A DNA stretch of 64,000 nt from Magallana gigas (taxonomy: Eukaryota), in assembly GCF_963853765.1 (NCBI RefSeq), contig NC_088860.1, positions 16,244,001 through 16,308,000 of the forward strand. The letters run 5' to 3'. The notes under the pieces are model-generated. The model saw only the letters and a program-made list of their open reading frames with translations. It searched no databases and was not told the origin of the DNA. Numbering within the stretch: position 1 is the stretch's first letter; every line of letters begins with the position of its first letter. Shown here piece by piece: positions 27,976 through 40,474 of the stretch. A program made the translations under genes and the position numbers.

Positions 27976-30900
27976 ATGGCGGCAAATTTTGACTGTGTGT
28001 TGATGCATGGACCACCTTTTTCAGTAAATGTCGATTATTTCGTGACTTTTATCATAGAAATTTGAATAGAAATATAGGAATTGAGTCAGTGAACCACTGA
28101 CTGTCATAATTTTACCGACAAAACTTGAGATACTCAGATAATAAACGGTTTAAGTACTGGGCATGCTGCACAGGAGTCGGCAATCTCATGGCTGGGTTTT
28201 TACTTATTTTGACTCTAGGTAATATGTTTTACGGTGCTACCGTTCTGGCGAGCGCAGCAAGAATTACACATACCTTGCACCATTGTCAACCTAGTGTTAT
28301 TTAGGTATCAACGAACGTCAAAGAATTTTTGAGAGAGTATTGCTCTACAATAAGTATGCCAAAGGTACTAATTTTAATGGTTATGATACATACAGCGCAA
28401 CCCCCTACCCCTCCCCCGAGACAAACACAGAGAGAGAGAGAGAGAGACAGCGCCCGGTCCCTGTTTGTAGGTGTGTAATTTCCCCCTTTTAAATTTAATG
28501 GTTTGACTATATGCAATAACTATATAAATTTTTTAACTGTTAATTTGTTCTCTATTGCTTTTCATTTAGTTTAAAATGTCCTATCGTTTATTTTTTCCCT
28601 ACTCATATACTTACCTGCCTTCTGTAAATGCATGCACAATTAGCTTAAAAATGGATCGATATGACAGTAAAGTATGGCTCTTGCTAGTACATGTATATAT
28701 TTATATAATCTCTATATAAAAAAATTAGAAACAAATCATATGTCAATGAGGGAAGTTTCGCAGTCTATACTGAAATAGCTAGTACACGCATTACAGATGT
28801 TTGATCCACCTCTAAATTTATCGCGGGAAATGTAGCGCGAGAGCACTGTGACGTCATCCATGACTTTGTTCATCTTTGTTTACGTATCTCGACTCAAAAC
28901 GAAGGTATAGAAGCAAGTAACAAATCTCTTGAGTCTCGCCAAAGCATATGCGGTACTCTAAACGTGTCTGCAAAGCTCAAGACACTGTAAATTACGAGTT
29001 AAATGTTAGCCATTTTTGGCATACCACCACGGGTGAAAACATTAGAGAGCATTATGGGACGTAGACAAAAAATTTTGTTTGATGAACTGTAGGTTTAGCT
29101 CGTTCTTTTTCCCGCGCACACTGGTTCTTGGAGCTCGCTATTATTTATTGATAAGATTGCCTGTGCATGCTGGGAGTGGAAAAAATAATCTTAACGTGAC
29201 CAGGCCTGGGGGCCATAAAAGTTAGACAAGCTCACTTTAATCTCAGTCTCACTTTTCAACTATATGTTCCTTTGGTTAAAGTGAGACTGAGATCAAAAGT
29301 GAGCTCGCCTAATTTTTCTGGCCCCGGGGCCGGACCCCGGACCTTAAAACTTAGACGAGCTCACTTTTGATCGAAGTCTCACTTTCACAAAAAGGAACAT
29401 ATAGTGTTAAAGTAAACCTGGCCCTGGGGCCATAAAACTTAGACAAGCTCTTTTTTGATCTCAGTCTCATTTTTCCACTATGTTTCTTTCGTAAAATTGA
29501 GACTTAGATCAAAAGTGAGCTCGTCTAAGTTTTATGGCCCCGGGGCCTGAAGTCAAAAGTGAGCTCATTTAAGTTTTTTGGCCCTGGAGCCTGGCTACGC
29601 TCAGGTCAGGGGTCCGTAGAACATCTGTCAATTTTAAAATTATAGTATATATTCTATATTGATGCTTGGAGTAACGTAATTTGTGTAGTCATTTTCATGT
29701 TTAGTATTTCCTGACTAAGATTTCTTTTATACAGTGTTAGTAACACAAATTTACTTTAATATAATATTGCAATTGTACATTGTAGTAGTTGGGGTTATAT
29801 CAGTCTGTATATGGACTGTGGATATCGGCCTTGGTAGCTCAGTTGTAGAGCTCCTGACTAGAGTTGCAGGGGTCCTGGGTTTGATTCCCGGTCCAGCCAT
29901 ATGTTTTCATTGTATTTATATACTCATTTCTCCTTTCCTACTACAGATGGTGCTGTGGCCTTCCTTGTTCAGGCAATTAAATATACATGTAATATATAAG
30001 TCCTGACAAGGTGAACTTGTGTTGTGTCTTCGGTGTCAAAGACTATTTAAGGAGAGAGGAAGGTAGTAGTTGGGGCTATATGAACCGTGGATATAGCCTG
30101 GATAACTCAGTGGTAGAGCTCCTGACTAGAGTTGCAGGGGTCCTGGGTTCGATTCCCAGTCCAGTCATATGTTTTCATTGTATTTATATTTGTATATATA
30201 AATTTTATATACTCATTCCTCCTTTCCTACTACACAATCATATACTGTATATTTTTTTTAGGGAAGTGATGTGTACTATGAAAAACATTTCTCTGGAGAT
30301 CATGTGAAGATTTGTCCAAGGAGCCTATTTTCTTCTAATCAGAATTATGGACTGAGAGACATTGTGCTGAATGTTCAAAGGTGTTTAAAACAGGTACAAC
30401 TTTTCATTTTCAGACATTTTTCTGTTGCAATGTTACAGTTTATGTAGTAAAATGGGGTTTTACAGTGTTAGTGTATGTTCTCCTCAATACCTTTCAATGC
30501 CTGACCTCTGACCCTGGTCAGTCCTTTTACTGGGCGTTTCATGTATGACAGTGCACCCAGCATTACATTAGCAGCCAAACCTAGAGTCCTGTTAGATACA
30601 GTACTAAATGGTCAATGTGCCCCTCCAGGTTTCTACCCACCATACTGCAGCTTTCCAAATCCATGGAACACCATTTATTGTACCATACATTGGTCCATTA
30701 ACATTATGCCCTAGTATGCCATGCCGCCACAATACATTGTATCAGTTTCATGGTTTGTACTTGACCTGATATGATTTATACATGGACAGTAAATTCCATG
30801 TTCAAAGTCCATGTGTCATGAATATATCTTACCGACTTCCTTTGTGTACTGTAAATGACAAGTTGTAAATAAAACCATGAAAAGTAAAGTTAACATTATA

Positions 30901-33900
30901 AAGTTTTACAATAGAGTTACAAATTTCCTACTGGGTACAAAACCTGATATCAACCAAATGCAATACCTATAAACCATATGCAGTATTGGTTATCAGACCT
31001 GGCCCTGGGGCCACAAAACTTAGATGAGCTCACTTTTGATTGTTCCATTTGTAAAAGTGAGACTTAGATCAAAAGTGAGCTCATCCAAGTTACAGGATGG
31101 TTATGTACCGATTACTAGAAATGTAAGTTTACTAAACTTTAGATGTGAGTTATGTTCTTGCTGTGGCAGTTACTGATACATATACAGTTTGTAACTCAGG
31201 AGCTGTATGATAATTTCAGTAAAAAAAATATAACATCAATTACACTACTGATAAGATTCAGGATACTTATATTTTATTTACTTTTTCAGTTGTTGAAGAA
31301 CAGGACCATATAGAACCAGGGTCATGTCAAACTATATATAAATGATATAGTCATCATTTGTCGGATCTATACTGTCTCTTATTTATAACTAAATATGAAT
31401 TAATAGTATATATATCTTCAATTTATACTGCATCTATAAATCATGTCATTTAGCTATAAAACATGGCAATTAGAGAGGCTCAATAGCAGTATTCGTCAGG
31501 AAAGAGGTGAAGATTATGTGGACTATGTGAGGAGGAATACATCAACAAGAAGATTAGTTGATCCAGAGAGACTTGTGCATGGTCTGGCCAATCTTAATGA
31601 TGGAACACCTCACAGAACAATCTGCAACGTTATTCTTCATCAGTATGAACTGGCGAGAGATGTGGGTGATTGGAGATGGATCGAGGCCCTCAGAAGGGAG
31701 TGCAGTACTATTCTGTGTTCAGCGAGATGGGTGGATGACCACCTGCCATCACTGGTTCATGAAGCTCATTCACAGAAAAGAGTACGACCATCAGTCAATG
31801 CATCTTCTGCCACTTCAGCTTCCATGTGTGTGGACATTCATCTTCGTTCTAACCTAGACTTGCAGTTTGAGCGAGAAAACGCTGTTGATGGCAAACACCA
31901 AACTCCATATGTTAACCCAGTGATGGAGGCCTCTGCATACAGACATGGTTTTTCCAATGAACGTCCTGTGTCAACCAGAGAAGATCCATATCTGACCGAG
32001 AACTTTCATTTTGACAAGACTAAGCCAAAGACGACTATAAGTGCTCATATTGTTGAAGCAAATGAAGGCAGTATGGAGATCCCTTCTAAACGAGTACGTC
32101 TTGACTGTGATGATCAAGAACTGACCCAAGAGGTGACGCTGCAGTTTCCATCATCTTTCCAGAGATGTCCGTTTCTAGGATGTGATGTTAGAGAAAAGAA
32201 GATCAAACGGCATGCGCAGAGTAAACACCTTCCAAGGATTTTTAATGATATAAAACCAATACGATCATTGGACGATAAATCCTTATGCCAATTCCAGATG
32301 TCTGCATTGTCATCTCTGGTGAAGAGTGCATTGGGACCAGATGCTGATTTACTATCAGCGGTTGACTACTTGAATTGTTCCAATATTATTCCATCAAACG
32401 CAGTTGTTCATGTTGACACTGCTTCATCCATGCACAGACTCTGTTCGTACCAAGGATGGACGGAACCTTCGGAGGGTTTCAGGTTGTCGCCAATCAACTC
32501 TCCTGCTGTTCTTGTCCATTGGAGATGTTTGGTTGCTTTGATGTCTCTTTTGCAGCCCATGCAATGTGAAGAATTTCGTGTCCATGGGCGTGTTATAACC
32601 GACATGCAGTCTGTTACCAATACTTCAGACATTGGTGGGTCCGATGTGAATACATTGACAGAGGATAAGTTTAAAGCTGTTGATGTTCATTATGGTTCTG
32701 ACTTTGAAATTCCTCATCAATCTGCACCTCATGTAGTAAGTCATTCAAAAACCAATGCCCTTGAAGTACAAGAGTCATATACCTCAAATGTGAATGAAGC
32801 CTTTGATAGCCATTTTCATTTGGACCACACTTGTGCAAGGATATGGGGGCATTATTCACCTTCTGGAAATACGATGGAGGATCTACACTCGGTTATCAAT
32901 CAGAGCAGTTTCCAGCCAAAGTTGAAAGTTAATATTGTAGGAGGTGTTATCAACTACAGTGAGCCTTCAGCACACCCTGAGTTCATTCAAGCTGGAGGAT
33001 CTTGGGGGATAGCTCTTGGTGTACACCCTAAACATGTTAGCGAGCTCACAGCAGAAAAACTCCTTCGTCTGAAGAATTTACTGAATCATCCCAGTGTAGT
33101 GGGTTTAGGTGAAACTGGATTGGATAGGACTGTTCCTGTAAAGCTGTGGAGACAGCAGGAAAAAGTTTTTCGCCAAGTTCTTTCCCTTGTACGTCAAAAC
33201 AAGGTATTGATTCTCCATCTCCGAGGAACTCCAGCAGACCGAATAGGAATAGACGTGCATGCACGGTGTATGCAGATTCTGAAGAAATTTTGTGGATACA
33301 CTCAGCCAATTCATGTCCACTGCTTTACGGGAGATACTGAATTGGTCACGGAATGGATGAGCAACTTCTCTAACGTGTATTTTGGTTTCACTGGTGCTGT
33401 GGAGAACTTTAGTTCTGATCAAGTTGCAGGCCTACAGTCTGTCCCTTTAAACCGGATTCTTTTAGAAACTGATTCCCCTTCCATGCGACCAGGAGGAGGG
33501 AACATCAACACTCCGGCTTTCATTGGGGATGTTGCGAGCCTCGTAGCATCAAAGCTACAGATTCCAGAACATCACCTATTGAAAGAGACTGTTCAAAATG
33601 GTCGTCGATTATATGGCTGTTAGAATATGTTAGAATATGAATGTTTCTGCAGAATTTAAGTCTGGATAATTTCCGACAAAATTCATGCAGAATATCTCTT
33701 GTATATAATTACTACAGTATAGGTCTGAGTGTTGGTTCGACCAAGTAACTTGTATAAATTCTTTAATATCAACTGTACATGTATATTGAACAATTCTTCG
33801 TAAATCTTTACATCATTAATCTTTATAGTCATTAAAATGAAATGGAAAGGAATGAAGTAAAGTAGGGTTTCACACTGTTCATATGTTTCCTCAATACCTC

Positions 33901-36900
33901 TCTATCCCTGACCTCTGACCCTGGTCTACCCCTCACTGGGCATGTAATGTGGTGTCCACTAGAACAGCAGCAGTTCAGACCCCAGCATCCCTGATGTCCA
34001 GACATATTACATACCTATGTTTATCCATGTGTGCATACATTTACATGAATCTATATATTTGCTGGAACCCCTTTTCTTTCTGAGGTAGGATACCAGCTCT
34101 ACATGTATATTTAATATCATGAGTACCTTGTTTTCGTAAACTTGGTTGCACAACATTCATGTTCTGTAGAGTATAGGGTTTACATGTATAGAACATGTGT
34201 ATGTATAGATGCGCTTCTTTGTTTGCATGAATGGGTTTGAAGATAAAAGGATTTTGCCTTAAAGTCAGTTTTTGTAAAGTTTTGAATAGATATACCGGTA
34301 ATTTATGATAAATCTGTATAGACAACTTATTTCAGAAACACATTCATAATTATTTACCAAGCATATTATCTTAACATTAAATTTGTATTAATTATGGTAA
34401 TTATTTATGCTCCTTTTTTTTATTTCTAGCATATTTGATAAGAATAGCAAAGTATGTTAATTAACGGTGGTTTAAATTGTGTTTTTTAGGATCAGAAAGT
34501 TGCTGTGGATGATGACAATGGTACATTTGCGAAAAGATCTTCCTATCTCAAACTTATCCAGAAAAAGGTACTGTATGTTGAGTTATATATAATATTACTG
34601 ATAATTTGAGTTATACAATCATTTCTACTAACTTATTTTAAACAAGTTTGATATTCATTTAGAGCAAAATGAAAAAAAGTACAAATATGTTATATTATTA
34701 TATTCCTATTTCTTCAGAATCTCCTATTCATTGATTTCATTCCATTACATTTCTCAAAATGTAGGCTAAGAACCAAGATGTGTACCAAAGAACCAAAATT
34801 TGGCAATACAGTTCCATAGTGGGTTAAATCAGTATGCTGTGACATACTCCAGCAATGTCGTAAAAATTAGTCAAAGGGTGTCAAGTACCCTTAAAGCCAA
34901 TGTATGAATGATTTCCATTTCCAGTTCCCAGAGAAGACCATAGCTCTGGTCAGTGTTCAGCCTAAATATGGCCAGTCCCAGGTGTTGTGGAACCAAGAAG
35001 TTTGTCTTAACGAGGAGGATGTGACAGTTAGTTATGCAGATATCACATCCTGGTTTGATCCCAAAACAGGCAAAGTGGCCTACAATTCAAGCAAGTTTAT
35101 ATTCATCTATACAAATACCTGTAATAACGTCAGTCGGTTATTGCCATGTTCTGCTAATTGCATCTTTTTTATTGAAATTGATATTTTGTCTTGTGTAAAT
35201 AAATTAATATATTAAAAGGCTTGTTTTACATTCATAGTTCATACCATTGGTATACATGTAGCCTCACAAGGAGGGATTTTATATTTGCATTGTGATTTTG
35301 ACTGCTGTTTAATTACCTATAAATTATAGATGAGGTACCTGATGAAGAGGAAGGATATAAACTATTTCATCATGAAGCACATCTTGAGAACTTTTCAGCC
35401 TTCAAGGTATGGAAATAAATTACATGTATACATTCTAAAGCCTCTTTTTATGACTGTAGTACATGTACATCCCACCCTTGGTCGTGGGGTGTTTTTTTGT
35501 TCTTCGATTTTTTTTTATATGAAACTTGAATCTTTTTTTCCCTCAAAACCTTACATGAAGCCTAGAAATAAAAACTAAACAATTTTGAACATAAATTGAA
35601 GAGAAAATATTGCCAACAAGACTTTACAAATGTAACATCTATAATTATCTTGAGTTATCTTCCTTGTTTCAGTTTGATATTCCAGGTCTGTTGATACAAA
35701 TAGAGAGTATCTACACAAAGTCTGACAATGGACTTAGCCTGAGACATGGGATTAAGGATATTTGTGTTCACTGGAATGAACAGAACCCCATAGGAAGAAT
35801 CATCTTTGTTCAGTTCGGTAGTTATACTTTCAGAGATTTAAGGCAGTATGAGCTGTTATTTATAAATAATCAATTTTACAATAACTTAAGTATTTTCCTT
35901 TAGAATAAGGATATTATAATTACAATAAATGTAATTTAAAGATCACAGATTTAATGTTATATTGATGGAAAACAAGATTTTCATAGTTTTTAATGGAAGG
36001 CTTGAGCAAAAGTGATAATCATATTTTTCTGTTTGTCATGGTGCATGTCCATGATTTATTCAGCAGGTTTTGCTGAAAGAGATAAAACTATAGTTTTATA
36101 GATTTGTTCACTGACAGTATGTGCAACATTTTCTTGTGCATAGTATCGTACATAAAATCATATACTTTTACAAAATGTGGGCTTGTTCATCTCTTTTGAT
36201 AAATAAATATATTTTTAGGAAACAGAGAACCAATGGATGAGATCAGACTTTTACTGACAAAGTTAGCAAAACAGGTAAGGTGAGAATATGCTAAGTTTGC
36301 TTAGACTAATAATTTACAGCTATCTTTTTTGTTTACCAGACGTAAAATTTTACAGGTAACCCCAGTCCTATGATGAGGAGAACAAATATAATGCAGTTAA
36401 AAGATGAATGTATAATATATGTATCATTGGATCTCTTACAATATTAAAAGAAGGTATAAACTATAAAAATACATATACAACTTGACGCTTTACTATAAAC
36501 TCATAAGTTTGTCTATAGTACATCACATTGATACTATTCTTTTTGGGTTTTATCTATCACTATAATCTTGATTTTTACATAAGGCAATGATATGAACAGT
36601 TTCAGGAGAACATTTGATTTTGTAGCTGGATTTCCCATTTTACCTGTTCCACATCTCAGAGCAGACTGCTGCCACTCCTTATTCGGAACCTCCCAATCCA
36701 GGAATTCTTGCATTTTTACAGAAGAGACACTGTCTGTTTCTGCACAGCACAGTAAGTGGTTTAATGTTGAAAGAGAGATGTAAACAGTAGGTAATCCATT
36801 GATAGACAGTATCTATAGGTTTACTATTGATAGCGGTACCATGTACTTTCAATAGGTTTTCTTACTGCCCACTCTATTCAATTTACATGAATGAAATGAA

Positions 36901-39900
36901 AAATTGTTTTAACCTGAAGGATTTTGTTCTTGAACTTCTGCTTTTTTCCAGAAAACCTTGTACATCTACCAGACTCAGAATCACATGAAGATGGCTCAAG
37001 CTGCTGGTGTCTACTGTGTTAAGGTACCTTAGGATGTTTTCTCTATCTTTTCTAGCTTTGTTAAATAAGATTTTTTCTCTAGCTGTGTTAAATGAGATGT
37101 TTTCTCTAATCCTTAGCTTTGTTAATAAGATGTTTTCTCTAGCACTGTTAAATACTTTAAAAAAAAATTACAATTTTTAAAATCTATTTCATGAAAAAAA
37201 TGCTTTGTCTTTAGCAACAAGAATGTTTTAGGCAAAAATAAATGTACGTGTATTTAAAATCATTGCAGATCACACAGGTTCTTCATAACACAGCATTGGT
37301 AAGTGTAATAATTTTTTCTGATTTACTGAATCTTTAAAAAAAATTCTGCTTATATGTTGCTTTGAACTGGTCTCTTTCGATAGTTGAGTAAAACATCACA
37401 GTACATTAATTTTGTTCTGACCTTAGGTCAACGGCAGTCATGTGATCACACGATCACCCGTCCCGGATTTCCTCAGAACCATGGAGATTTTACCAAAGTC
37501 CCAGACACCTTCTAGGATCCCCAGTCTGCCTTGTGTTACACAGGACAGAGATTGGTTGAACAGTTACATGAGATGTGAGCTTCCCCAGGGAAGGAAGGAA
37601 TTCATTTTTGCCCAAGATATTGATACTGTTTTGAGGTATGCCAAAGTCATATTGTACATACTGGTATACATATAAATATAAAATTGTAAAGTTTCAGGTA
37701 CTGTATTTTATAATTGTTTTAGCTACCAAGAGCTTTATCAGAGTTGTGTAACCAAACTGACAAAGCCTGAATGTATCTACACTCAAAGCAGAGGTGGAGA
37801 GGAGGAGCCCAAGGTAGACAATAACACATCACTGAATAGCTCCACCAGAAAGCTGCCATCTTGGATGTTGGGAAAGGAAGAGGCCACGCCAACCAAACTG
37901 TCACTGGACAGGACTGATAGTTCCAGCTCTACAGATGGACTCGGCAGGTACCTGTAGAGGGTTTACTGAAACAATGTATGAATGGAAAGGGGGGGGGGGG
38001 CATAGGACACAAAATTTAATTTTTTATTCATATAGACCAGAAGATAGAAAAATCTTTTATTTTTGTTAATTATCAAGTTTTTTGTAAGACGTACATTTAT
38101 TTGAATATTTATGATTGATGGGAGTTGATTTAAATCAACTCTCCTATGCACTTACTTGGGCAAAGCAAAAGTGAAACAGTGTTTGGACCTAAGCACAAAT
38201 CAATACAGCTGACAACACTTAGTTCTTAAAAATAATCTATAAATTCGATGCTATGTATTCTGAAGCATTGTTTTTCAAGAAAACTTATTTATTAATACCA
38301 TGAAAATAGTAAGATTTTAAATTGTACAAACAGTTTAGATATTTTTTAAAGTCGTATGATTCCTACGCTAGAGTTCAATGTAGTCTTGTTCAACCAGACA
38401 CTTGGCTGTCTCCGTTAACATTCTAGCCTAAGTCACGCAAGCCGTTTGACTCCCCACTCAAACGTTTGTTGTAGAAAGTATTTACAAACGTCAAGGTGAA
38501 CTAGACTAATAATATCCAACAAAACAGAGTCTCTCTTCCTTGTCGGAGATAAATGGAGACAGCCGAGCGTTTGGTTGAACAAGACAAGAGTTCAATCTTG
38601 CCTGGATCCATACAATTTCTCAGAAATATTTCGATTACTGATACTTCTTGCCATGCAAAATCACATCATTGATTTTGAATAAATGATAATCGATAAAATC
38701 AACTCCCATCAGTACTTCAGTACTTTGATATATTTACATTTGTTGATACATTGTTACAGAAGATGGAATTTTTTATTTTAAGAATGATGAATTTAAATTT
38801 TAAGATTTAACTAGTACATGATGCAAGAGGTGAAGCTAATCGATTTATTTTTTTAAGGCAAACATTTTATATAATGAATGAGGAAGAACTTCTAGAAGTT
38901 GCCAAAGACGTTTTGAAGCAGGTAAAAGTTATATGAATATTAGCTTTGTTTTTCATATTCAATTACTGGAAATCGTGAACCTCAGTATTCTGTTGTCATC
39001 AAAATAAATTAATTCAATACAAGATGTTTAAACATACAAATTACAGGCAGGAAAGAACACAGTTCTGAGATATGTTTGTGCAGAGTCTGACATTGGCAAT
39101 AAAACATGGAATAAGAATGGTAAAAATAAGATTGACCCAAAATCCTACAAGCATCAGAATCTCAATGTAAAAGGGAAATCGGCCATTGAAGAGCAGGAGA
39201 GTGACAAGCCTGGCCCAAGTGGATGGAAGCCTAGGAGGGGATCAGGGTTGAAGCCCATTGATAAATCAGAGTTGGACAGACCACAGCAAAAGAGGAGGGG
39301 TGCTGGCAGCAAATGTACCTTACTGGACGACCTGATGGGGGAGACAGGGGTTAGGAAGGCCAGCCCTTGCAAAACTAGGTGAGGGTAAAGATATTCATCT
39401 GTTGCCCTATTGGGCGTGTATTTTCTTGATTTCCAGGCCAAACATATTGTATAGTTTTATAAATTATGACTATTTTTTTGTTGTGTTTGTATTTTATGAA
39501 GAGCCCGGAAACTAGCTTTAATAACGTTTATTTAATATTTGACCTTTAATACCTCTAGATATCAACCTAAGAATAAAGAGGAAGAGAAGGAAAGCCATAT
39601 GTCATCATCAGCTTCAAAATTCAAACCCACAAGTAAGAGGGGTGTCAAAAAAACTCTTGACTTTTTGGAAAAGGGTGATGATCAATCCACATCAATTGGA
39701 TTAAAAACCATGAGTGGTGCCTCAAAAGAGACAGCGTTAAGGGACCTAAGTGAGATATGTGTAAGAGGCAGCTCAGAGGAAATTCTCCCAGATTCCCTAG
39801 AACCTTATCCTTCTGATCTGTTTCCAAGCACACGTGTTAGTTCAAACGAAACTAGAAGAAGGACAGTTGGATTTAAGGACTCTGAAAAATCACCACGGAC

Positions 39901-40048
39901 AGTGAATCCGCCGGTCAAAGACTCAAAAAAGAGGACATCCGACTCTGATGAAAGACAAACACGTAAAGTTAGAAACACAGGTGTGAAAAGTGAGCAGATC
40001 CCATCAAATAAACCCGACTTGTCTGTTTTAGATGAGATATTTTTCTGA
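27976..40048 (+). CDS. Pseudo-polynucleotide kinase/phosphatase fused to a CYREN/MRI-like C-terminal module, 15 exons, about 749 aa
   Basis: Exons: 27976-28023, 30262-30393, 34490-34567, 34925-35090 (GC donor), 35330-35406, 35673-35817, 36219-36274, 36626-36751, 36952-37023, 37269-37298, 37427-37635, 37723-37947, 38858-38921, 39047-39378, 39559-40048. Phases consistent, 2250 nt. Motifs: HGPPFSGSDVYYEKHF (P-loop-like), KVAVDDDNG, FDIPGLLI, EPPNPGIL, MAQAAGV (HAD-like), RKLPSWML, TFYIMNEEELLEVA, LSVLDEIFF-stop. Exon 1 is inferred from its P-loop alignment and phase. Confidence 0.78.
29201..29595. repeat. Cluster of palindromic GGCCCCGGGGCC-ended MITE units
   Basis: Repeated foldback units GGCCATAAAACTTAGACGAGCTCACTTTTGATCTCAGTCTCAC and their reverse complements; another partial copy at 30994-31090. 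Confidence 0.7.
29781..30234 (+). mobile_element. TRIM with tRNA-derived LTRs (Helenus/TRIMp3-like)
   Basis: LTR1 29781-29945 and LTR2 30062-30234 (TGTAGTAG...CTACTACA, roughly 90% alike). PBS TGGTGCTGTGGCC at 29948-29960, PPT AAGGAGAGAGGAA at 30049-30061, 116-bp non-coding interior. Each LTR has a tRNA-like A/B-box segment (29827-29899, 30096-30167). Confidence 0.88.
30443..30560 (+). repeat. LTR-like direct repeat, 5' copy (partner at 33853)
   Basis: Begins TGTAGTAAA; shares TCCTCAATACCT, CCTGACCTCTGACCCTGGTC and ACTGGGC with the 33853 copy. Confidence 0.65.
31443..33623 (+). CDS. Intronless TatD-family nuclease with N-terminal extension and C2H2-like zinc finger, 726 aa, nested in an intron
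   Basis: TatD motifs FDSHFHLD, LGVHP, GETGLD, LHLRG, VHCFTG, LETDSP and NTPAFI. Finger CPFLGC...RHAQSKH. TATA-like TATATAAA at 31335-31342 and ATTAAA near 33830. Confidence 0.9.
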   Translation: MSFSYKTWQLERLNSSIRQERGEDYVDYVRRNTSTRRLVDPERLVHGLANLNDGTPHRTICNVILHQYELARDVGDWRWIEALRRECSTILCSARWVDDHLPSLVHEAHSQKRVRPSVNASSATSASMCVDIHLRSNLDLQFERENAVDGKHQTPYVNPVMEASAYRHGFSNERPVSTREDPYLTENFHFDKTKPKTTISAHIVEANEGSMEIPSKRVRLDCDDQELTQEVTLQFPSSFQRCPFLGCDVREKKIKRHAQSKHLPRIFNDIKPIRSLDDKSLCQFQMSALSSLVKSALGPDADLLSAVDYLNCSNIIPSNAVVHVDTASSMHRLCSYQGWTEPSEGFRLSPINSPAVLVHWRCLVALMSLLQPMQCEEFRVHGRVITDMQSVTNTSDIGGSDVNTLTEDKFKAVDVHYGSDFEIPHQSAPHVVSHSKTNALEVQESYTSNVNEAFDSHFHLDHTCARIWGHYSPSGNTMEDLHSVINQSSFQPKLKVNIVGGVINYSEPSAHPEFIQAGGSWGIALGVHPKHVSELTAEKLLRLKNLLNHPSVVGLGETGLDRTVPVKLWRQQEKVFRQVLSLVRQNKVLILHLRGTPADRIGIDVHARCMQILKKFCGYTQPIHVHCFTGDTELVTEWMSNFSNVYFGFTGAVENFSSDQVAGLQSVPLNRILLETDSPSMRPGGGNINTPAFIGDVASLVASKLQIPEHHLLKETVQNGRRLYGC
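33853..33970 (+). repeat. LTR-like direct repeat, 3' copy, preceded by a purine tract
   Basis: GGAAAGGAA (33844-33852) lies immediately before TGAAGTAAA; about 80% similar by eye to the 30443 copy over about 90 bp. Confidence 0.65.
38380..38586. mobile_element. MITE with ~35-bp TIRs and 10-bp TSD (MULE-like)
   Basis: GTCTTGTTCAACCAGACACTTGGCTGTCTCC versus GGAGACAGCCGAGCGTTTGGTTGAACAAGAC; AGAGTTCAAT at 38370-38379 and 38587-38596. Confidence 0.8.
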
Positions 40049-40474
40049 ATAAAATCTTTTTTAATATTTACCAAAGTTTGCATTTTCAATTAAAATTTAG
40101 GTTGCTATGGAGAAATTTCTTTTATATAAAATAAGTTAAGATTAATAAAAGTATGTTAAACATTGTTTATGTCGACCAGAACGTTTCCAAGAAGGGAAAG
40201 CAACTTCTTCTGTATTTGGAATTTACTGCAACTGAACTGAAATATGACGTCAGTCCGTGCATTTCATGTTTTCATTTTAGATAAAAGCTATGATCAACCA
40301 TAAAATAATACACACATAGGATACTTCTATATCATGAACAGCGACAACAATAAACTCTAACAATGCAATCAGTGCTTGATTAAACGTTGTCATTTGATAC
40401 AATGAAGTCATTTGATACAATGAAGACTGCTTTAAGCAATTTCAAAACATAGGTAATCAAAGATTACAAAGCTC

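What the first reader, a model, noticed from the sequence alone, without database searches (positions are those of the whole stretch)
37723..40048. CYREN/MRI-like Ku-binding module at the C-terminus of a large invertebrate protein
Seen: the last four exons encode, in order, RKLPSWML (37847-37870), RQTFYIMNEEELLEVAKDVLKQ (38858-38921), a long low-complexity stretch and terminal DLSVLDEIFF-stop. Known (from memory): human CYREN/MRI (C7orf49, about 157 aa) has the same order: APLF-type Ku-binding motif RVLPSWL, RTVYCMNEAEIVDVALGILIE, and XLF-like C-terminal VLKYVREIFFS. Inference: this is a mollusc CYREN orthologue carried on about 480 aa of extra N-terminal domains, so the vertebrate microprotein may be a truncation of a larger ancestral NHEJ factor. 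I do not know of this architecture being described.
Basis: partly seen in the sequence, partly recalled or inferred. Interest (0 to 1): 0.85.

Follow-up and report, generated by a model that had tools for sequence, protein, structure and literature searches.

The report
Oyster long-form CYREN/MRI Ku-binding protein
An expressed 15-exon gene, in a genome that earlier notes of this scan call Pacific oyster, ends in all three working parts of the small vertebrate DNA-repair protein CYREN/MRI. Here they sit on about 420 extra N-terminal residues, a layout that a 2023 preprint mentioned in one line for sea urchin.

Summary
RNA contigs from three studies splice these exons to each other and to at least ten upstream exons. 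The 749-aa model is open throughout; only exon 1 is inferred.

A profile I built from 57 mammalian CYRENs aligns colinearly to residues 419-480, covering the Ku-binding motif and the multimerisation domain (17.5 bits, E 2.6e-7 for one comparison). None of 20,000 shuffles reached that score. hhalign gives 88% probability.

A diverged relative keeps the middle and end motifs almost letter for letter in a tail that is 45% identical overall. The middle motif has its own small exon in both oyster and mammals, with the same 3' boundary.

Pfam's MRI model gave no hit on the pieces I could submit, so formal family membership is not shown.

The architecture is not undescribed. A 2023 preprint lists an oyster CYREN (K1RRV0) and says sea urchin has a PNKP-like protein fused to a CYREN-like Ku-binding motif.

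The PNK-like reading of the N-terminal part was not confirmed here. The spliced protein has no reference, so it could not be folded or profiled whole.

The parts
27976..28023 (+). Exon 1 (aa 1-16, MAANFDCVLMHGPPFS), inferred
   Evidence: It has an ATG, ends in phase 0 with a TCA|GTAAAT donor, and is the only productive partner I found for exon 2. It lies outside the stretch laid with reads, so no RNA junction was seen for it.
30262..30393 (+). Exon 2 (aa 17-60)
   Evidence: The last 30 loose letters of the X4 contig before 34488 match 30362-30391, and the splice to 34490 follows.
34490..34567 (+). Exon 3 (aa 61-86)
   Evidence: Joint 34567>34925 in X1, X3, X4 and one X21 read.
34925..35090 (+). 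Exon 4; its downstream intron has a GC-AG border
   Evidence: Joints in three contig sets.
35330..35406 (+). Exon 5
   Evidence: Joints.
35673..35817 (+). Exon 6 (begins FDIPGLL)
   Evidence: Joints.
36219..36274 (+). Exon 7
   Evidence: Joints.
36626..36751 (+). Exon 8
   Evidence: Joints.
36952..37023 (+). Exon 9
   Evidence: Joints.
37269..37298 (+). Exon 10 (30 nt)
   Evidence: Joints.
37427..37635 (+). Exon 11 (aa 311-380)
   Evidence: Joints 37298>37427 and 37635>37723 in X1, X3 and X4.
37723..37947 (+). Exon 12 (aa 380-455), carries the A-KBM
   Evidence: Joints; translation.
37847..37870 (+). APLF-type Ku-binding motif RKLPSWML (aa 422-429)
   Evidence: It fits the core R-x-x-P-x-W of PMC4831024. 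It has Met after Trp, as most species' MRI do. It aligns to the KBM columns of mammalian CYREN. It is kept in P0004-P0006.
38858..38921 (+). Exon 13, 64 nt: counterpart of the MRI multimerisation domain (MuD), (R)QTFYIMNEEELLEVAKDVLKQ, aa 455-476
   Evidence: It is the top hit of the mammalian CYREN profile among 2104 six-frame ORFs of the window (16.5 bits, E 0.0011). It is 9/21 identical to the mammalian consensus and 18/21 identical in L001, where the exon is also 64 nt.
39047..39378 (+). Exon 14 (aa 477-587), low complexity with two conserved islands: PGPSGWKPRRG at 39209-39241, and SKCTLLDDLMGETGVRKASPCKTR from 39308 to the exon's end, with its last codon finishing at 39559
   Evidence: Joints. 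The islands are conserved in L001 and L002. Their function is unknown.
39559..40048 (+). Exon 15 coding part (aa 587-749 plus stop)
   Evidence: Joint 39378>39559. Exhaustive phmmer found only three fragment relatives.
40010..40045 (+). C-terminal XLF-like motif KPDLSVLDEIFF
   Evidence: It aligns to ...DVLKYVREIFFS of mammals. It is 12/12 identical in L001, whose tail is 45% identical overall.
40048..40070 (+). Poly(A) signal AATAAA (40048-40053) and cleavage sites
   Evidence: Loose A-runs follow 40068 and 40070 in X1.

Best explanation
The gene makes one mRNA for a 749-aa protein. Residues 1-400 have the composition of a folded domain. Residues 401-749 form a disordered tail that carries the full tripartite module of vertebrate MRI1/CYREN in the same order:
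- an APLF-type Ku-binding motif (aa 422-429);
- 25 residues later, the beta-strand-plus-helix multimerisation domain (aa 455-476);
- an XLF-like motif as the last residues.

I take the tail to be homologous to CYREN, and the gene to be the oyster counterpart of CYREN in a long form.

Inferred mechanism, none of it shown here: the two end motifs dock on the Ku80 vWA domain at DNA double-strand breaks. The middle domain makes dimers or multimers, so that several Ku molecules are held at once. The tail thereby brings the N-terminal domain to Ku-bound ends. That domain may be a catalytically degenerate PNK-like domain.
For: - One transcript: spliced contigs of 2042 and 2330 nt join exons 2-15, and the ORF is open.
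- Profile match: an HMM of 57 mammalian CYRENs aligns positions 8-75 to aa 419-480 (17.5 bits, E 2.6e-7 at Z=1). None of 20,000 shuffles reached 17.5 (maximum 8.4), and exon 13 is the best hit in the whole window. hhalign gives 88% probability, E 2.7e-6, over 120 columns.
- MAFFT places the three oyster pieces on the three motif blocks.
- The human elements and their roles are documented: A-KBM and X-KBM peptides; MuD residues 49-81 with 54-YCMN-57 and V64/L66/I68/L69; Met after Trp as the common state.
- Conservation islands in relatives.
- Exon structure: the MuD is a separate cassette exon in mammals (aa 47-71). Its 3' junction is in phase 0 at the same aligned place as the oyster exon 13/14 junction.
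- Composition: the charge-hydropathy score is +0.13 for aa 1-400 and -0.15 for aa 401-749.
- A preprint lists an oyster CYREN and a sea urchin PNKP-like/CYREN-KBM fusion.
Against: - Pfam MRI (PF15325, cut-off 27 bits) gave no hit on exons 12-15 taken singly or on the 55-aa KBM-to-MuD piece. That model covers only residues 57-154 of mammalian CYREN. My own profile reaches 17.5 bits.
- The similarity rests on about 40 residues in three short blocks, and short linear motifs can arise convergently.
- The C-terminal motif alone does not score in a local profile search.
- The A-KBM is seen conserved only in close relatives.
- No binding, multimerisation or repair data exist for this protein.
- No annotated full-length relative turned up in the protein libraries.
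Confidence: 0.72

Rival explanations
1. Convergence. The tail is an unrelated disordered region of a repair-related protein that independently acquired Ku-binding short motifs. The middle match would then be a chance amphipathic helix.
For: There is no Pfam MRI hit. The motifs are short. PMC4831024 notes more than 600 human proteins with R-x-x-P-x-W. The tail between the motifs shows no similarity to CYREN.
Against: All three elements appear in the same order with similar KBM-to-MuD spacing (Trp to Tyr is 32 residues here, 38 in human). The middle block alone is the best hit in the window. None of 20,000 shuffles matched the score. The 3' exon boundary of the MuD exon is shared. The last four residues, EIFF, are identical.
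Confidence: 0.15
2. Fusion artefact. Exons 12-15 are normally a separate short CYREN-like gene, and the long transcript is read-through or a mis-assembled contig.
For: In run X1 the 3' contig has a higher word depth (202) than the 5' contigs (37-43). Exon 1 is unverified.
Against: Single contigs in X3 (2042 nt) and X4 (2330 nt), from different studies, span exons 2 or 3 to 15 at uniform depth. Exon 12 starts in mid-codon with no Met. The nearest upstream in-frame Met residues lie in exon 11. Junctions 37298>37427 and 37635>37723 are in all three contig sets.
Confidence: 0.04
3. The tail is a general Ku-binding tail, as in APLF or WRN, on a PNKP-family end-processing protein, and not specifically a CYREN relative.
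For: WRN also combines a KBM with an XLF-like motif.
Against: Among the Ku binders covered in the papers read here (APLF, WRN, XLF, PAXX, MRI), the YxMNExE... helix block is described only for MRI. The exon-wise Pfam search of exons 2-6, 8, 9 and 11-15 found no FHA, PBZ or helicase/exonuclease domain.
Confidence: 0.07

Closest known systems
Vertebrate CYREN/MRI isoform 1 (human Q9BWK5, 157 aa; Pfam PF15325)
   Same: It has an A-KBM, then the MuD about 30-40 residues later, then a disordered Ser/acid-rich stretch, then ...EIFF at the C-terminus. The MuD lies in its own small exon whose 3' boundary falls at the same aligned place. Met follows Trp, as in most species.
   Different: The oyster protein is 749 aa. 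The module starts at residue 422, after a domain with the composition of a folded one, instead of at residue 11. The MuD-to-end spacer is about 260 aa rather than about 75, and it holds extra conserved islands. The final Ser is missing. Pfam's model does not detect it.
[quoted passage not shown]
   Same: It is an invertebrate long protein with a CYREN-type KBM. The oyster entry may be this very gene.
   Different: The preprint mentions only the N-terminal KBM and says nothing about a MuD, an X-KBM or transcripts. I could not fetch either sequence, so identity with this locus and the PNKP-like nature of the oyster N-terminus are untested.
APLF
   Same: It has the same class of Ku80-vWA-binding motif (R-x-x-P-x-W-M-L) in a disordered region of a larger scaffold protein.
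   Different: APLF has FHA and PBZ domains and lacks both a MuD and a C-terminal XLF-like motif. The exon-wise Pfam search of exons 2-6, 8, 9 and 11-15 found no FHA or PBZ domain.

Membership tests
CYREN/MRI | APLF-type Ku-binding motif (R-x-x-P-x-W) upstream of the central domain | tested here: met
   RKLPSWML at aa 422-429. It aligns to the KBM columns. The core motif is taken from PMC4831024.
CYREN/MRI | Central multimerisation domain: beta-strand YxMN followed by an amphipathic helix (human residues 49-81) | tested here: met
   The sequence FYIMNEEELLEVAKDVLKQ scores 16.5 bits alone and is the best hit in the window. Y, M and N, and three of the four helix positions mutated in the 4A4D mutant, are conserved. 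Self-association itself was not tested.
CYREN/MRI | XLF-like motif at the extreme C-terminus (...REIFFS) | tested here: met
   The protein ends ...SVLDEIFF-stop. The motif is invariant in L001 and L002. It is too short to score alone.
CYREN/MRI | Match to Pfam PF15325 at or above its 27-bit cut-off | tested here: inconclusive
   No hit on exons 12-15 taken singly or on the 55-aa junction piece. The model spans only aa 57-154 of mammalian CYREN. The whole spliced protein has no reference and was not submitted. My own full-length profile gives 17.5 bits.
CYREN/MRI | Small, wholly disordered protein of about 70-190 aa | tested here: not met
   749 aa, with an N-terminal 400 aa that has folded-like composition.
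CYREN/MRI | Binds the Ku80 vWA domain and modulates NHEJ | not testable with these tools
   Needs peptide binding or cell assays.
PNKP-like protein with CYREN-type KBM (sea urchin type) | N-terminal polynucleotide kinase and HAD phosphatase folds | tested here: inconclusive
   Exon-wise searches of Pfam, NCBIfam and PHROGs (exons 2-6, 8, 9 and 11; not every exon in every library) and PDB sequence searches with exons 4, 6 and 11 gave nothing. Smith-Waterman against T4 PseT scored 34, against a shuffle mean of 33.4 +/- 4.6. By eye, GPPFSGSD, VDDDNGT and FDIPGLL look like degenerate P-loop and DxDxT motifs, but two incompatible readings fit equally well.
APLF | FHA domain and PBZ zinc fingers | tested here: not met
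   No such Pfam hit on the exons searched: 2-6, 8, 9 and 11-15.

The most novel reading that the evidence does not exclude
Vertebrate CYREN, usually treated as a stand-alone micro-protein, would be the orphaned tail of an ancient bilaterian NHEJ factor. [quoted passage not shown] Oyster and sea urchin would keep the long form, and the multimerisation domain would predate vertebrates by more than 500 million years.
Probability: 0.4. Interest if true: 0.65.

Novelty: new member of a known kind. Interest (0 to 1): 0.45.

Why it matters
[quoted passage not shown] Its reported roles conflict: it stimulates NHEJ in some contexts and inhibits it in S/G2.

A long invertebrate form that keeps all three functional elements would do three things:
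- It would show that the multimerisation domain and the two-ended Ku grip are ancient.
- It would give a natural context for what the tail delivers to DNA ends, namely an attached globular domain.
- It would offer a tractable non-vertebrate system to test whether CYREN began as the Ku-tethering tail of an end-processing protein.

The point is softened because a preprint has already listed an oyster CYREN and noted a PNKP-like fusion in sea urchin.

Tried and rejected
1. Pfam on single exons and on a typed 55-aa KBM-MuD piece gave no MRI hit.
2. Exhaustive phmmer with exon 15 found only three ORF fragments and no full-length protein.
3. A word-indexed search with a typed 98-aa oyster piece found three oyster fragments only.
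4. A profile search with mammals plus oyster pieces listed only mammals. The 422 weaker hits were not shown or stored.
5. An ESM Atlas search with the nested TatD ORF, meant to get a taxon, gave nothing.
6. For the N-terminal domain I tried exon-wise Pfam, NCBIfam, PHROGs and PDB searches, and a pairwise test against T4 PseT. None was significant.
7. An alternative first exon at about 29055-29089 was rejected. It either ends in a stop or shifts exon 2 out of frame (reading).
8. Steps left out: Pfam, HHpred-type searches, structure prediction and fold search on the whole spliced 749-aa protein.

It agreed with residue numbers given in a paper. Only the sequences the tool returned were used afterwards. 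I looked up no contigs of the unnamed primate-identical hits, some of which may come from human samples.
Full report
**Observation.** The three peptide motifs are in the sequence at the stated coordinates.
- RKLPSWML is at 37847-37870.
- RQTFYIMNEEELLEVAKDVLKQ is at 38858-38921, with its Arg codon split AG|G across the 37947/38858 junction.
- KPDLSVLDEIFF is at 40010-40045, directly followed by TGA.

Loose regular expressions for the three motifs each match once in all six frames of the 64-kb window, at these places. Shuffled windows give 0, 0 and 0.37 matches.

**Gene structure and expression.** I laid Logan contigs of three runs from different studies, plus raw stranded poly(A) reads, on 34200-40150. 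One spliced transcript came out. After the stated cut shifts its exons are 34490-34567, 34925-35090, 35330-35406, 35673-35817, 36219-36274, 36626-36751, 36952-37023, 37269-37298, 37427-37635, 37723-37947, 38858-38921, 39047-39378 and 39559 to the poly(A) site at 40067-40070.
- Single contigs of 2042 nt (X3) and 2330 nt (X4) span all of these exons.
- The X4 contig runs 255 nt further upstream. Its last 30 letters match 30362-30391, which is exon 2 (30262-30393).
- The TatD-type ORF at 31443-33623 (Pfam TatD_DNase, 1.5e-38) therefore lies inside intron 2.
- Raw reads lie with the first mate on the minus strand, as expected for a plus-strand RNA in a standard stranded library.
Exon 1 is inferred, not seen in RNA.

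The Ku-binding motif starts at residue 422, so the extra N-terminal part is about 420 aa rather than 480.

**What the vertebrate protein looks like.** Tool-returned sequences of about 180 mammalian CYRENs, most of them flagged PF15325, and two papers fix the reference.
- The A-KBM is SETKTRVLPSWLTA and the XLF-like motif is VLKYVREIFFS (PMC4831024).
- Position 17 is Met in most species, and Met raises Ku80-vWA affinity about 30-fold (bioRxiv 10.64898/2026.07.22.740027).
- Residues 49-81 form a multimerisation domain (MuD). It has a beta-strand around 54-YCMN-57 and a helix in which V64, L66, I68 and L69 matter. It is needed for NHEJ stimulation in cells.

The oyster tail has RKLPSWML with the common Met. 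Its FYIMN-EEELLEVAKDVLKQ keeps Y, M and N and three of the four helix positions. It ends in EIFF.

**Is the likeness more than motif-spotting?**
- I built an HMM from 57 full-length mammalian CYRENs. It aligns positions 8-75 to oyster residues 419-480 in one colinear stretch across the KBM, the linker and the MuD (17.5 bits, E 2.6e-7 for a single comparison).
- None of 20,000 shuffles of the oyster protein reached 17.5 bits; the maximum was 8.4.
- Scanned against all 2104 six-frame ORFs of the window, the profile's only significant hit is the exon-13 ORF (16.5 bits, E 0.0011). The exon-12 ORF comes third.
- hhalign of the oyster tail against the mammalian alignment gives 88% probability, E 2.7e-6, over 120 columns. 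A three-species mollusc alignment gives 86%.
- MAFFT puts the three oyster pieces, given separately, onto the three mammalian motif blocks.
- The C-terminal motif is too short to score by itself.

**Pfam.** The MRI model gave no hit on exons 12-15 taken singly or on the 55-aa KBM-to-MuD piece. A control with true CYRENs shows that this model covers only residues 57-154, from the MuD helix to the C-terminus. It therefore excludes the A-KBM, and in oyster it would have to bridge a spacer of about 260 aa. The whole spliced protein could not be submitted because it has no reference. I score this test as inconclusive. By Pfam's own standard the protein would probably go unannotated.

**Conservation.** Exhaustive phmmer with exon 15 found three fragment clusters only. 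I fetched their contigs.
- L004 is about 96% identical in DNA including introns, so it is the same or a sister species.
- L002 and L003 are about 86% identical, consistent with a congener.
- L001 aligns at DNA level only over exon 13.

In L001 the tail is 45% identical overall. Even so, it keeps QTIYVMNEEELLDVAKDVLKQ (18/21) in an exon of the same 64 nt, and it keeps KPDLSVLDEIFF (12/12). It also keeps two further islands, PGPSGWKPRRG and SKCxxLDDLMxETxxRxASPxKTR. The A-KBM is conserved in P0004-P0006, but those are close relatives. I have no exon 12 from the distant species.

**Exon structure.** Mammalian splice isoforms diverge exactly after ...PVAAAR (residue 46) and after ...GILIE (residue 71). 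Some replace the stretch in between by another cassette. The mammalian MuD therefore sits in its own exon of about 75 nt.
- The residue after E71 differs in its first codon letter among isoforms, which points to phase 0.
- The oyster exon 13/14 junction falls after ...DVLKQ, the aligned position, also in phase 0.
- The 5' junctions differ by about four residues and probably in phase.

This is modest extra support for common descent.

**The rest of the protein.** Residues 1-400 have folded-like composition and residues 401-749 disordered-like composition. The MuD and the last ten residues stand out as hydrophobic islands.

I could not confirm this.
- Exon-wise searches of Pfam, NCBIfam and PHROGs, covering the N-terminal exons of 20 aa or more, and PDB sequence searches with exons 4, 6 and 11, gave nothing.
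- Smith-Waterman against T4 PseT scored 34, against a shuffle mean of 33.4.
- By eye, GPPFSGSD looks like a Walker A motif without its Lys, and FDIPGLL looks like DxDxT without its second Asp and its Thr. But VAVDDDNGTFAK fits either a kinase 'D-x-x-N' strand or a HAD motif I.

By-eye reading therefore does not settle it.

[quoted passage not shown] Its Table S1 lists K1RRV0 as the Crassostrea gigas CYREN and A0A7M7HMK7 for sea urchin. No other held paper mentions these accessions or this fusion. Earlier notes of this scan call this genome Pacific oyster; I did not test that. The architecture is therefore not undescribed, although it has only a one-line mention.

As far as the papers I could search go, four points seem to be new:
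- RNA proof of the fusion in oyster.
- The MuD and the X-KBM are present as well, so the whole MRI1 module is there.
- These elements are conserved among oysters.
- The MuD exon boundary is shared with mammals.

**Mechanism.** What is shown: one transcript, one ORF, a colinear profile match, and conservation islands. [quoted passage not shown]

**Verdict.** The origin of vertebrate CYREN by truncation remains a reasonable but untested inference.

Noticed in passing
window:38110-38735: A MITE-like element of about 600 bp sits in intron 12. It has perfect 16-nt terminal inverted repeats (38116-38131 / 38696-38711) and an inner 50-nt inverted repeat. Its word depth in RNA contigs is 20-50 times higher than that of the exons. 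It is absent from the orthologous introns of L004 and L002, so it is an insertion polymorphism or a recent insertion.
   Followed up: partly
window:31443-33623: An intact, intronless 726-aa ORF with a complete C-terminal TatD DNase domain (Pfam 1.5e-38) lies in the sense orientation inside intron 2 of the CYREN-like gene. The ESM Atlas gave no usable hit for it.
   Followed up: partly
window:39209-39241 and 39308-39378: Two further conserved islands lie in the otherwise fast-evolving tail: PGPSGWKPRRG and SKCxLLDDLMGETxxRKASPxKTR. They are kept in a relative whose tail is only 45% identical and have no counterpart in mammalian CYREN. They may be extra docking motifs.
   Followed up: partly
window:35091-35329: The intron after exon 4 uses a GC-AG border. 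All three RNA contig sets support it.
   Followed up: no
window:11170-19750 (+): An upstream plus-strand gene has coiled-coil exons. Two of them look like paralogous copies (…EYERMKLKYEIEFNCRTQAEMLATKV at about 11.2 kb and …EYEALQQKYELEKQCRSGAEQFATEV at about 14.5 kb). A long TLYGY-type tandem repeat sits at 13.1-13.5 kb. It is a separate gene from the one studied.
   Followed up: no
window:55308-55754 (-): A minus-strand exon encodes an EF-hand segment of the neuronal-calcium-sensor/KChIP type (…[19 protein letters not shown]…).
   Followed up: no
window:37154: One X1 contig joins 255 unrelated letters to position 37154 inside intron 9. This may be an alternative haplotype or an unspliced variant. 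I did not resolve it.
   Followed up: no
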